A DNA stretch of 64,000 nt from Bigelowiella natans CCMP2755 (lineage: Eukaryota > Protista > Cercozoa). Positions 1 to 2,530 of the stretch are shown here, piece after piece. The notes under the pieces were generated by a model. The model searched no databases. It was not told the DNA's origin and saw only the letters and a program-made list of their open reading frames with translations. The translations under genes and the position numbers were made by a program. The DNA lies in assembly GCA_000320545.1 (NCBI GenBank), contig ADNK01001278.1, positions 108,181-172,180 of the forward strand. Reading direction: 5' to 3'. The stretch's first letter is position 1; the number at the start of each line of letters is the position of its first letter.

Positions 1-2530
1 TTTCTTCTCCGAAACTTCTTCCCTGAAGAAGACCAATTCTAGGCTTGGATGCGCAGCATCCTGGTGGAATGATTGCAGATAAGGAATTCGCAACATCAAT
101 TTGAAGCAAATGAGAAAGCGTTCAAAGATTTCCTTTCCCAATGTTCTACTGTTACAAAATAGTACTTTTGAGGGGCTGTTCTAATCTTACAACATACCCC
201 TTTCTTGGCTATCTATGTACTATTCTTACCGAATTCTCAATGATATATTGCTGGCAGCTCTTGTCCTTGAATAGTTTATTAACCCCTTTCTTTACATCAT
301 CGCATCTTTGAAAGCCGAGATCCTTAGATAAACGAAGGTTTTAGATAGAAAAGGGCTGTGGCAGAAGCCTTAAGCTTTAAAATGAGCGTTGTTTTCACAA
401 TTTTGTTAAATTTTGGTTAACAAAAACAAATATTGTCACTATCCTCCACTTTGGTTTGTTTCCCTCTCCAAAGACAATCCTGTACCTTGATGACATTGTA
501 GAAATTCTTCTCGCGATCAGCGAATCTGGCCCTGTTGGCAATCCACAAATGTAAGGGTTTGGTAGACACCGTCCTCACCAATTCGATGGTCTCGAGCAAT
601 GCCCCATATGAGTCGGCTTCGTACATACAGTCCGACATAATCAGCACATCTGCAATAATTGCAGCAGTAACGATGTTCAGATCACAACGAGCAGGAGAAT
701 ATGCAGTTGTATAAAGATGTGATAATGTCAGAAGTAGTGAAGGATAGACAACCTATCGGCATGCTATCGAGTATTTCCTGAGACAGCTTTGAACCCCATA
801 CGTACTGCGAAACCACAAGCCCCTCAGCTTTTTCCTGCTTAATTTATCCCATAAAGGCATTCGACTAAGATACTTTGGCGGATTTGAACAAAAATGTAAT
901 TGGTTAGCTTGTTGTCACCTCATTCGTGAGATTCCTATGAGCGTTGTAACGAGCTAGTTTGGTGTATTTCTCAGAACCTAATGTTAACCAATAAATGGAA
1001 AAATATACTTGGCTTGTCGATTTCTCACAATTGTCAAGGCAAAGCCTTAATTTTCATTGCCTAACCGTCTGTAATATGGACGAACGCAGCCCCTGCGATC
1101 TTGCATGCAATGCTTACCTACGATATTGGTTCATTTACTTTTATGTGTACTACGAGTAGTGTTCACCAGAAAATTAATGCACAGCCATCGCTACAATAAT
1201 CGCAGTCATCTCTGATTTTATTTGCCCTATTTTGTAATCTTTATCTGTTCTTTCTCAAACATCTTCTTCACTCAATATAATATTTTATCACCAGTCCTGT
1301 CCCGGCACCAATCTCTAAGACCCTTTTCCCTCGTACCCCTCCTGCTGGGAGAAGAGCTTCAGCCTGAGAACGACAATAATCGCATTAGACAACGTGGTGA
1401 TAATCACGATGATGATGGTGCACTTTGTAAACGTGAAATAGCCTTATGGAATTCACTAATGATTCGCTGTGAAGTATATCATGCTGATCTTTCGCTTCCA
1501 CAGATGGAATTACGGCGCAGTAACTTTATAAAGTTATTACGCACTACCTGTTCCACCATACTGTTTGCAACAACGAAAGACAGGAGAGCGCCACATCCCC
1601 ACACCGCGCCTCCTGTATCCATACGTGAGACATTGGGAGCGACAGAGTTCATCTTGTTCTTTGAGTAATCCAATAATCGCTCCTTTTCCCTGATGAGGTC
1701 TATGACCTGATCGCAAAGCTCCTGAATGCTGATGATATCTTTCTCCGATATCTCCGTCCCCATGGATATTTCAGCCGTTTCCTTCAGCTTGATCTCCAAA
1801 GTCTTTGGCAGAATATTGGAGAAGTTGACGTCCTTTGCGTTGGCGCGCATGCCCATAGCCTTGACTGCCTCGGCAAACATGAGAGTATCCGGAACTATCT
1901 TTATTATCTCAGGGAAGTGCCATCCATACCATTCCCGCATGCGCATGGCGTATGTTTTAAGATCTTTGTCAACTTTATCCAAGTTTGCTAAGTTGAGGAG
2001 GAGAGCGTTGAGTGGAGAAAACGGTGTTGATCAGAACAGAACAGAAGAGAATGCGTAGAACGGGAAAGTTCGTATGAAAGTAAATCGGAAAGGAATGTAA
2101 GGGAATGACTCAGCAGATGCACTCCACGCACGGAGGAATGACGAAAGAAAAGATTTATCTCAGTCTTATTACTGCTCTCACTGTCCTGCCCAAACTGCTG
2201 CGTGATGACCAGCTTCCTTTTGGAGGGAATCGGTAGGATAAGTGTACGAGATTCTCTATGGCGAAGAGAAGGGGAGTCCCCGGAGGAGGAATTGATGCTG
2301 CTATCGCTCATAAGCACCGTCGCCGTCCCCTCATCAATTTTCGCCATCCTCCTCCTCCTCCGTCTGATTAGCTCTCCTGACAGGTGGCGTTTTTGGTCTG
2401 CGACTTGCTGAATTATCAATAAATCCAAATTAATCAGGCTGTTTTGTTCAACGCGATGGGTGGCCTTCCGACGGAGCCTGTATTTCATTGTCGTAGGAAG
2501 AAATTGGCCTTTTGGTTGTGAAAGCGTCAT
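1..2530 (-). CDS. Chimeric multi-exon gene: NOP58-like NOSIC/coiled-coil segment fused to a Methyltransf_16 (METTL21-like) protein methyltransferase; 3' end outside window
   Basis: Exon ~1990-1548 encodes [25 protein letters not shown]...ISMGTEISE...LCDQV...MNSVAPN (NOP58-like) and continues without a stop into DTGGAVWGCGALL. Phase-compatible GT-AG joins then give VLEIGAGTGL (1363-1292), VSIACKIAGAAFVHITDG, SEKYTKLARYN, VVSQYVWG, DVLIMSDCMYEADSYGALLETI...ANRARFADREKNFY and DLGF. These are the Methyltransf_16 motifs in the expected order. The first exon and start codon (2530, or an internal Met) are uncertain. Confidence 0.8.

What the first reader, a model, noticed from the sequence alone, without database searches (positions are those of the whole stretch)
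417..1990. NOP58 coiled-coil fragment fused in frame to a METTL21-like protein methyltransferase
Seen: about 120 codons of clear NOP58-like sequence stop at MNSVAPN (~1632). The same ORF then runs straight into RMDTGGAVWGCGALL, the TG..VW motif that opens Methyltransf_16 enzymes. All later methyltransferase motifs follow through phase-compatible GT-AG introns. Established: this NOP58 region is the coiled coil plus tip that mediates NOP56-NOP58 dimerisation. The fibrillarin-binding N-domain and the RNA-binding Nop domain are absent here. Inference: this is either a young chimera (the NOP58 piece is intron-free, as expected of a retroposed fragment, and has an odd DYSKNKM for DYL..RM) or a protein methyltransferase that docks on box C/D snoRNP via NOP56. 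I know of no described fusion of this kind.
Basis: partly seen in the sequence, partly recalled or inferred. Interest (0 to 1): 0.8.

Follow-up and report, generated by a model that had tools for sequence, protein, structure and literature searches.

The report
NOP58 coiled-coil inserted in a methyltransferase
The alga Bigelowiella natans expresses a real hybrid gene in which a 122-residue piece of its own ribosome-biogenesis protein NOP58 has been spliced into the middle of a protein-lysine methyltransferase. The piece has stayed under selection, so it may aim the enzyme at the RNA-modifying snoRNP machinery, though that is untested.

Summary
Spliced transcript contigs from three independent studies cross every junction. 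The public JGI model Bigna1/134996 carries Pfam Nop (positions 2-120 of 228) directly followed by Methyltransf_16.

- An upstream exon (2173-2372) encodes the methyltransferase's N-terminal strands, so the NOP58 piece is an internal insertion. It lies in the loop before the GAVW motif and is not an N-terminal fusion.
- The stop at 417 is intronic. Two more exons follow and the gene runs off the window's left edge.
- The piece is neither retroposed nor young. Its 3' splice site has the same position and phase as an intron of the genome's own NOP58, and a tree places it as sister to that gene (96/91).

Synonymous sites are saturated and dN/dS is about 0.1. Thirty-two of 41 highly conserved NOP58 positions survive. 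No second protein with this architecture was found, within the limits of the searches.

The best reading is a lineage-specific exon capture that gave a METTL21-like lysine methyltransferase a NOP58 coiled-coil module, most plausibly for pairing with NOP56. Binding, targets and minor isoforms remain untested.

The parts
2173..2372 (-). Exon 1. Short 5' UTR, ATG at 2347-2345, 58 codons plus 1 nt (phase 1). Encodes MAKIDEG...RTLILPIPSKRKLVITQQFGQDSES, the N-terminal strands of the methyltransferase.
   Evidence: Transcript contigs of X1, X2 and X6 reach 2362-2372 and join 2173 to 1987. With the insert removed, this exon aligns to METTL21C ...ITIHESIES before LGAVVW. AF2 predicts strands at P0001 residues 21-27 and 33-39, at low confidence.
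1988..2172 (-). Intron 1 (185 nt, GTAATA...ACTTAG). Its acceptor is at the same codon position and phase as the intron of the genome's own NOP58 that precedes LLDELDKE.
   Evidence: Joint 1987/2173 appears in three runs. No residual intron similarity remains.
1620..1987 (-). NOP58-derived part of exon 2: 122 codons, NLDKVDKDL...APNVSRM. It covers coiled-coil helix 1, the tip and helix 2.
   Evidence: PF01798 positions 2-120 of 228, E 1.3e-31. It is 63% aa and 70% nt identical, without gaps, to own NOP58. It is sister to BnNOP58 in the tree. The AF2 model matches human NOP58 7mqa_SB at TM 0.91 and rmsd 1.1 A.
1548..1619 (-). Methyltransferase part of exon 2: DTGGAVWGCGALLSFVVANSMVEQ. It is continuous with the NOP58 piece, with no splice between them.
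   Evidence: The PF10294 match starts at P0001 residue 169. One contig piece covers 1547-1987 in three runs.
1613..1614 (-). AG of a candidate cryptic or ancestral acceptor (gatacAG|GAGGC). It is phase 1, like the acceptor actually used. Using it would give ...DSES-R-GAVWGCG, a canonical enzyme without the insert. This is hypothetical.
   Evidence: Read directly from the sequence. It is not seen in the contigs, but contigs drop rare forms.
1292..1363 (-). Exon 3: AEALLPAGGVRGKRVLEIGAGTGL (SAM-binding motif I).
   Evidence: The invariant columns L209, E210, G212, G214, T215 and G216 are in A6.
1066..1117 (-). Exon 4: VSIACKIAGAAFVHITD (post-I acidic residue).
   Evidence: T233 and D234 are invariant in A6.
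919..977 (-). Exon 5: GSEKYTKLARYNAHRNLTNE.
753..834 (-). Exon 6: EKAEGLVVSQYVWGSKLSQEILDSMPI (the WG motif). It has a NAGNAG acceptor; the JGI model uses the CAG 3 nt upstream.
486..649 (-). Exon 7: DVLIMSDCMYEADSYG...NFYNVIK (the DxxY motif of family-16 lysine methyltransferases).
   Evidence: PF10294 positions 124-171, E 7e-5 on this exon alone. Joint 485/321. D289 and Y292 are invariant.
230..322 (-). Exon 8: DLGFQRCDDVKKGVNKLFKDKSCQQYIIENS, the last strands of the methyltransferase fold.
   Evidence: It aligns to the METTL21C C-terminus ...VKLFKG.
1..60 (-). Start of exon 9: DAAHPSLELVFFREEVSEKK... It continues beyond the window's left edge into a lysine-rich tail (...KEHKKKRPGLKKSDGR). 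The predicted stop lies about 90 nt outside the window, in L005.
   Evidence: Contigs run over the window's edge. Contiguity beyond the first 46 nt is not verified.

Best explanation
This is an expressed, lineage-specific chimeric gene of Bigelowiella natans.

Shown:
- A 366-nt piece of the host's own NOP58 gene is part of exon 2 of a single-copy METTL21-like (Methyltransf_16) protein-lysine methyltransferase gene. The piece begins exactly at a NOP58 intron/exon boundary and brings that 3' splice site with it.
- The piece is spliced into the mRNA and gives a 428-aa protein.
- The NOP58 coiled-coil hairpin plus tip sits as an insertion in the loop between the enzyme's N-terminal strand (LVITQQ...) and its GAVW motif.
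- All SAM-binding and DxxY motifs are intact.
- The insert has evolved about 25 times faster than the parent NOP58. It still shows purifying selection and keeps most family-invariant residues.

Inferred:
- The insert still folds as an antiparallel helical hairpin whose two ends lie close together, which is why a loop tolerates it.
- It acts as a protein-protein interaction module. The most likely partner is the coiled coil of NOP56, the natural partner of this domain.
- That would bring the lysine methyltransferase to box C/D snoRNPs or their assembly intermediates. The lysine-rich, NLS-like C-terminal tail fits a nuclear or nucleolar location.

I put about 0.9 on the anatomy and origin, about 0.65 on the insert being functionally constrained, and about 0.3 on NOP56 or snoRNP docking specifically.
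For: Expression and structure: one spliced contig per run in three studies joins 2173|1987 and covers 1547-1987 without a break. All eight introns are GT-AG.

Domains: PF01798 at residues 49-168 and PF10294 at 169-337 on P0001. PDB sequence hits are Nop58 residues 170-291 and METTL21A, C and D. Atlas structure matches over residues 169-388 are all Methyltransf_16, with TM about 0.7.

Insertion site: with the insert deleted, QQFGQDSES|DTGGAVW aligns to METTL21C IHESIES-LGAVVW.

Origin: the insert is sister to BnNOP58 (96/91) inside a chlorarachniophyte clade (98/92). Branch lengths are 0.58 for the insert and 0.024 for BnNOP58. Intron position and phase are the same.

Selection:
- pN is 0.19 and pS is 0.705.
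- Differences by codon position are 34, 15 and 60.
- Amino-acid identity is 63%, against 44% +/- 3% (maximum 56% in 20,000 trials) when the same 109 changes are placed at random.
- The probability of no stop codon in those trials is 0.03.
- Thirty-two of 41 columns that are at least 90% conserved are kept. The losses cluster at the hairpin base, which in NOP58 abuts the domains missing here.

Fold: AF2 of the insert gives pLDDT 87, two long helices (2-27 and 85-119) and TM 0.91 to human NOP58.

Role of the domain: the CC domain mediates NOP56-NOP58 heterodimerisation (PMC7826282).
Against: - No binding evidence of any kind exists.
- Nine invariant NOP58 positions are changed, including Y100E, R101K and L108S in helix 2. 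These changes could abolish or re-target pairing.
- No orthologue with or without the insert was found, so constraint rests on a single pairwise comparison with saturated dS and a large GC3 shift.
- Selection to keep the ORF open and the domain foldable inside a needed enzyme could produce much of the signal without any function for the insert.
- Logan contigs cannot exclude a minor or major insert-skipping isoform. The one raw RNA run gave only 6 reads.
- The AF2 model of the insert used a NOP58-family alignment, so it leans towards that fold. The full-length model is poor (pLDDT 55).
Confidence: 0.6

Rival explanations
1. Tolerated passenger. The NOP58 piece was captured by accident and is kept only because it is a self-contained hairpin that does not disturb the enzyme. 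Selection merely keeps the frame open and the hairpin foldable. It has no binding partner and no function of its own.
For: The insert evolves about 25 times faster than the parent gene. It has lost 9 of 41 invariant positions. The architecture was found in one species only. An insert in a constitutive exon of a single-copy enzyme gene is automatically protected from stops and frameshifts.
Against: Amino-acid identity (63%) is far above the neutral expectation (44%, maximum 56%). Second codon positions are spared (15 changes against 60 at third positions). Surface-exposed family motifs such as [20 protein letters not shown] and IQELCDQV are kept intact, which is more than foldability of a helical hairpin would need.
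Confidence: 0.27
2. Alternative-splicing by-product. The working enzyme is made from an isoform that skips the insert by using the in-frame, phase-1 AG at 1614-1613, giving ...DSES-R-GAVW... The insert-containing mRNA is a non-functional or regulatory isoform.
For: The AG at 1614-1613 is phase-compatible and would recreate a spacing like METTL21C ...IES-L-GAVVW. Contigs drop rare variants, and only 6 raw reads were available.
Against: Assemblies from three independent studies each give only the inclusion form, at the full depth of the gene. The only other pieces are unspliced intron fragments. The coding-type constraint on the insert would be unexpected if it were not translated.
Confidence: 0.1
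3. Artefact. A genome mis-assembly or gene-model error joins two unrelated genes.
For: None was found. It was a legitimate concern for a draft assembly of 3,736 contigs.
Against: RNA contigs from three studies match the genome with no differing letters across both junctions and carry the flanking methyltransferase exons on both sides.
Confidence: 0.01

Closest known systems
METTL21-type protein-lysine methyltransferases (seven-beta-strand MTase family 16; METTL21A 4LEC, METTL21C 4MTL, METTL21D/VCP-KMT 4LG1 and 8HL6)
   Same: A complete Methyltransf_16 domain (79 bits). It has the GxxVW, LEIGAGTG, ITD, WG and DxxY motifs, 30-36% identity to METTL21C and TM about 0.7 to METTL21/23 clusters.
   Different: It carries a 122-aa NOP58 coiled-coil domain in the loop before the GxxVW motif, plus a lysine-rich C-terminal tail. 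No other family member with PF01798 was found. The substrate is unknown.
NOP58, core protein of box C/D snoRNPs (e.g. 7MQ8/7MQA chain SB, 5WLC chain SB)
   Same: The coiled-coil helices and tip correspond to human and yeast residues about 168-291, at 46-64% identity. The insert is sister to B. natans NOP58 in the tree and the model matches at TM 0.91.
   Different: It lacks the fibrillarin-binding N-terminal domain (PF08156) and the SNU13-RNA-binding half of the Nop domain, so it cannot be a snoRNP core protein. The bona fide NOP58 is elsewhere in the genome (C2474).
PRPF31, the NOP58 paralogue of the U4 snRNP
   Same: It is a precedent that the same CC hairpin can be re-used with a different partner. 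According to PMC7826282, the PRPF31 CC binds PRPF6 rather than NOP56.
   Different: PRPF31 keeps the Nop domain and is an ancient pan-eukaryotic paralogue. Here only the CC was copied, recently, into an enzyme.
Chimeric genes made by exon shuffling or exon capture (a general class; this comparison is from my own knowledge)
   Same: A DNA-level copy of part of one gene, bounded by a parental intron and using the parental splice acceptor, has been recruited into another gene's intron-exon structure.
   Different: The captured piece ends inside a parental exon and is fused directly, without an intron, to the recipient exon. It forms an internal domain insertion rather than a terminal addition.

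Membership tests
Methyltransf_16 / METTL21-like protein-lysine methyltransferases | Pfam PF10294 match above the gathering score | tested here: met
   79.1 bits against a cut-off of 21, covering P0001 residues 169-337 and profile positions 15-172 of 174.
Methyltransf_16 / METTL21-like protein-lysine methyltransferases | SAM-binding motif I (E/DxGxGxG) and the post-I acidic residue | tested here: met
   LEIGAGTGL and HITD are present. L209, E210, G212, G214, T215, G216, T233 and D234 are invariant in the alignment with 24 METTL21C-like proteins.
Methyltransf_16 / METTL21-like protein-lysine methyltransferases | DxxY motif lining the lysine channel, and the N-terminal GxxVW motif | tested here: met
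   SDCMY, with D289 and Y292 invariant, and GAVW, with W176 nearly invariant.
Methyltransf_16 / METTL21-like protein-lysine methyltransferases | Lysine methylation of a protein substrate | not testable with these tools
   This needs an enzyme assay.
NOP58 (box C/D snoRNP core protein) | N-terminal fibrillarin-binding domain (PF08156 NOP5NT) | tested here: not met
   There is no PF08156 hit on P0001. Genuine NOP58 hits carry it.
NOP58 (box C/D snoRNP core protein) | Complete Nop domain, including the SNU13-K-turn-binding C-terminal half | tested here: not met
   Only profile positions 2-120 of 228 are present. Homology to own NOP58 stops at APNVSRM.
NOP58 (box C/D snoRNP core protein) | Coiled-coil hairpin with tip | tested here: met
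   Gap-free alignment over 122 aa at 63% identity. Model helices at 2-27 and 85-119, with TM 0.91 to 7mqa_SB. The model was built on a NOP58 alignment.
NOP58 (box C/D snoRNP core protein) | Heterodimerisation with NOP56 through the coiled coil | tested here: inconclusive
   The one complex prediction returned 'no answer', which counts neither for nor against binding.

The most novel reading that the evidence does not exclude
The captured NOP58 coiled coil still pairs with NOP56, taking NOP58's place. The protein would then be a snoRNP-directed lysine methyltransferase or a methylating regulator of box C/D assembly. That would be a new way of aiming a METTL21-type enzyme at a ribonucleoprotein, invented within the chlorarachniophytes by exon capture.
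Probability: 0.25. Interest if true: 0.7.

Novelty: new variant of a known kind. Interest (0 to 1): 0.5.

Why it matters
METTL21-family enzymes find their substrates (HSP70, VCP, eEF1A) through poorly understood surfaces in a variable N-terminal region. Here nature has placed a domain with a well-known binding partner in exactly that region. That gives a ready-made hypothesis for both substrate and mechanism. It is also a clean, datable example of domain insertion by exon capture, with the parental splice site still in use.

If the insert binds NOP56, it would be the first protein-lysine methyltransferase wired to box C/D snoRNPs. It would also be a natural NOP58 mimic, useful for dissecting snoRNP assembly. 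If it does not bind, it remains a well-documented case of a fast-evolving but constrained captured domain in one protist lineage.

Tried and rejected
- Complex prediction of the insert (P0001 44-175) with the B. natans NOP56 coiled coil (L003 ORF residues 50-200) returned 'no answer'. It is not used as evidence either way.
- Full-length AF2 with a methyltransferase-only alignment gave mean pLDDT 55. The core reached 70-80 and the insert 40-59. That is too poor to say how the insert sits on the enzyme.
- MAFFT could not co-align NOP58 rows and methyltransferase rows with the chimera. A2, A3 and A5 were misaligned, so no mixed alignment could be used.
- Residual similarity between intron 1 and the NOP58 intron was not above shuffled controls.
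- A retrocopy origin is rejected, because the 5' boundary is a parental intron boundary with its AG.
- An endosymbiont (green-algal) or nucleomorph origin is rejected by the tree. A role in the nucleomorph compartment, where only one Nop56/58 gene is encoded (PMC6461891), is unlikely because the N-terminus is hydrophilic with no leader. That last point is by eye only.
- NOPCHAP1-type docking is unlikely, because NOPCHAP1 needs the CC and NOP domains together (PMC7826282).
- Searches for the same architecture elsewhere found none:
  - the 1.84-billion-representative search (only P0001 matches beyond residue 122);
  - two word-index searches;
  - a JGI metagenome scan;
  - two literature searches.
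- Limits of those searches: only the best 150 and 120 hits are shown; the length window was 243-773 aa for the methyltransferase search, so short insert-less orthologues could be missed; and no eukaryote genome collection was available.
- The spliced 428-aa protein itself could not be submitted, because it has no reference. P0001 differs only at its start, by one Q and at the C-terminal end, and was used instead.
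Full report
**What is in the sequence**

On the minus strand, ORF 1482-2030 translates to ...[26 protein letters not shown]...MNSVAPNVSRM and then runs without a stop into DTGGAVWGCGALLSFVVANSMVEQ. Pfam places the first part on the Nop domain (PF01798), profile positions 2-120 of 228, at E 2.5e-31. The exon at 486-649 alone matches Methyltransf_16 (PF10294) positions 124-171.

**Organism and public model**

The window is contig C2459:108181-172180 of a 91-Mb assembly. 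An exhaustive protein search returned a 442-aa public model identical over the query. It is named jgi/Bigna1/134996 (Bigelowiella natans) and has PF01798 and PF10294 precomputed. On that model Pfam gives Nop at residues 49-168, followed immediately by Methyltransf_16 at 169-337 (79 bits against a cut-off of 21). The architecture thus exists in a public gene catalogue. I found no paper describing it.

**Transcript evidence**

Public runs of the same organism hold about 40% of the words of 300-2700, which is what a spliced mRNA would give. I laid four runs on 1-3600. Contigs from three different studies (X1, X2, X6) each gave one spliced molecule with these minus-strand exons:
- 2173-2372
- 1548-1987
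- 1292-1363
- 1066-1117
- 919-977
- 753-834
- 486-649
- 230-322
- 1-60 and beyond

All eight introns are GT-AG, and no letter differs from the genome.

Three consequences follow:
- The NOP58-like piece and the methyltransferase start lie on one uninterrupted exon in the mature RNA. This excludes both a mis-assembly at about 1625 and a transcript that starts at Met 1622.
- An upstream exon 1 is joined in phase 1 to an acceptor at 1988/1987.
The donor at 486/485 is used, the stop at 417 is intronic, and two further exons follow.

The runs are labelled RNA only by a guess, but intron-less contigs with canonical splice sites can only come from spliced RNA. Contigs cannot show rare isoforms, and the one raw RNA run gave just 6 reads.

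**The protein**

The spliced CDS, completed with L005 beyond the window, gives 428 aa:
- MAKIDEG...RTLILPIPSKRKLVITQQFGQDSES-T;
- then the 122-aa insert, NLDKVDKDL...APNVSRM;
- then DTGGAVWGCGALL..., LEIGAGTGL, HITD, YVWG and DVLIMSDCMY;
- then a lysine-rich tail, ...KEHKKKRPGLKKSDGR.

The JGI model differs in three small ways. It starts at Met13, has one extra Q at a NAGNAG acceptor, and has a further predicted 3' intron.

With the insert deleted in silico, LVITQQFGQDSES|DTGGAVW aligns to METTL21C ...ITIHESIES-LGAVVW. The NOP58 piece is therefore an internal domain insertion in the loop between the N-terminal strand and the GxxVW motif. It is not an N-terminal fusion.

The methyltransferase part is complete:
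- Motif I, the post-I aspartate, WG and DxxY are invariant columns in an alignment with 24 METTL21C-like proteins.
- PDB sequence hits are METTL21A, METTL21D and METTL21C.
- Atlas structure neighbours over residues 169-388 are all Methyltransf_16, with TM about 0.7.

It is single-copy in the genome, and the nearest paralogue is 29% identical.

**Where the insert came from**

The genome has one bona fide NOP58 (C2474), one NOP56 (C2622) and one PRP31 (C1214). The insert aligns to the NOP58 without a gap over 122 codons, at 63% amino-acid and 70% nucleotide identity.

The true NOP58 has a phase-1 intron between ...IIQAI and (A)LLDELDKE. The insert's acceptor (cttAG|CA AAC TTG GAT) lies at exactly the homologous position and phase (ttcAG|CG CTC CTG GAC). 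Downstream of that intron the parental gene is one exon. The lack of introns in the insert therefore says nothing about retroposition. The shared boundary, with a working AG, argues instead for a DNA-level copy. No intron similarity is left.

Homology ends at ...APNVSRM / ...APNLSHM, inside the parental exon, 6-7 nt before an AG at 1614-1613. That AG is also phase 1. It could be the ancestral acceptor of the methyltransferase exon, because using it would give ...DSES-R-GAVW. This last point is an inference.

In a 54-row maximum-likelihood tree of this region, the insert is sister to B. natans NOP58 (96/91). Both sit inside a clade with Amorphochlora and two unnamed close relatives (98/92). The terminal branch is 0.58 for the insert and 0.024 for NOP58. 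The copy was therefore made from the host-lineage gene within the chlorarachniophytes, and afterwards evolved about 25 times faster than its parent.

**Age and selection**

- Synonymous sites are saturated: pS is 0.705 (dS about 2) against pN 0.19 (dN 0.22).
- GC3 is 0.96 in the parental segment but 0.61 in the insert, close to the 0.55 of the rest of the host gene. The capture is therefore not recent.
- Differences fall 34, 15 and 60 on codon positions 1, 2 and 3.
- Placing the same 109 nucleotide changes at random gives 44% +/- 3% amino-acid identity (maximum 56% in 20,000 trials) and an open frame in only 3% of trials. The observed values are 63% identity and an open frame.
- Almost all amino-acid change is on the insert's branch, so its own dN/dS is roughly 0.1-0.4. 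That is relaxed compared with NOP58 but clearly below 1.
- Of 41 columns that are at least 90% conserved among NOP58s, the insert keeps 32, including [20 protein letters not shown] and IQELCDQV.
- The nine losses (positions 1, 5, 8, 10, 100, 101, 108, 111 and 119) lie at the two ends of the hairpin. In NOP58 those ends adjoin the N-terminal and Nop domains that are missing here. That last statement is from my knowledge of the Nop5/NOP58 structures.

Caveat: this is one pairwise comparison with a strong compositional shift. An insert in a constitutive exon is also shielded from stops in any case.

**Fold**

With a NOP58-family alignment, AF2 models residues 44-175 at pLDDT 87. It predicts two long helices (2-27 and 85-119) flanking a small helical tip. 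Foldseek matches NOP58 chains of human and yeast SSU processomes at TM 0.88-0.91 and rmsd 1.1-1.3 A. This is expected from the alignment used, so it shows compatibility only. An antiparallel hairpin has its two ends side by side, which explains how a loop can accept it. This too is an inference.

**How it probably works**

The CC domain of NOP58 has one established job, heterodimerisation with the CC of NOP56 across the C/D and C'/D' motifs. In the paralogue PRPF31 the same domain has switched partner to PRPF6 (PMC7826282).

METTL21-type enzymes recognise folded protein substrates, and their N-terminal regions are structurally diverse (PMC10339199).

My best reading is that the insert is a docking module on an otherwise ordinary lysine methyltransferase. 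NOP56 is its likeliest partner, so the enzyme would act on or near box C/D snoRNPs or their assembly intermediates. The basic tail would fit nuclear import. Everything in this section beyond the domain's known role is inference, and I give the NOP56 version about 0.25-0.3.

The main rival (about 0.27) is a tolerated, foldable passenger with no function. A smaller one (about 0.1) is that an insert-skipping isoform is the real enzyme.

**Distribution**

Only P0001 matched beyond residue 122 among the 150 best of 2,207 hits in 1.84 billion representatives. No other protein combined PF01798 with PF10294 in two word-index searches. A JGI metagenome scan found only ordinary NOP58 and NOP56 genes. 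These searches are limited, as set out under Tried and rejected. "Unique to Bigelowiella" is therefore provisional.

**Verdict**

It is a new variant of a known enzyme family, made by a known kind of process. I rate its interest as moderate (0.5). It would rise to about 0.7 if NOP56 or snoRNP docking were shown.

Noticed in passing
window 2591-3493 (+ strand) and onward: A divergently transcribed neighbour gene. Spliced contigs cover 2591-2694, 2887-3020, about 3181-3251 and 3396-3493, with GT..AG introns. It starts MDDLADLAEEFGQRESLTSRLRNILSLYPEGP and continues ...GVLFELIQNADDAKATEV, which looks by eye like a sacsin/HSP90-type ATPase (HATPase_c) motif. Only about 220-230 nt separate its 5' end from that of the methyltransferase gene. 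Adapter remnants at contig ends 2362 and 2591 suggest a short bidirectional promoter.
   Followed up: partly
window 834-837 (minus strand): A NAGNAG acceptor (ttaag|cag|GAA). The transcript contigs use the distal AG, giving NEEKAEG. The JGI model uses the proximal one, giving NEQEKAEG.
   Followed up: partly
L002 (G000:C2474:2500-5868), ORF 742-2514: This is the genuine B. natans NOP58. Its roughly 384-nt phase-1 intron happens to be open in frame, so the six-frame ORF reads through it. GC3 of the coiled-coil segment is 0.96, against 0.55-0.61 in the window's gene. That is a strong codon-composition contrast between genes of one genome.
   Followed up: partly
window 1399-1559 and 2031-2191: Short low-depth contigs in X1 and X2 cover intron 2 and intron 1 contiguously with exon edges. 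They probably represent unspliced pre-mRNA or retained-intron reads.
   Followed up: no
window 3483-3620 and 3924-4060: Two simple repeats: a (GAT/GAT-like) trinucleotide-rich stretch that reads as His-, Ile- or Asp-rich runs, and a (CA)n microsatellite. Both lie just beyond the neighbour gene's mapped exons.
   Followed up: no
runs X19 (organism B) and X20 (organism C): Runs labelled as two other organisms hold 19-27% of the 31-mers of this stretch. They could be other strains, mislabelled cultures or close relatives. They would be the first place to look for the insert outside the reference strain. My one read-laying run was already spent.
   Followed up: no
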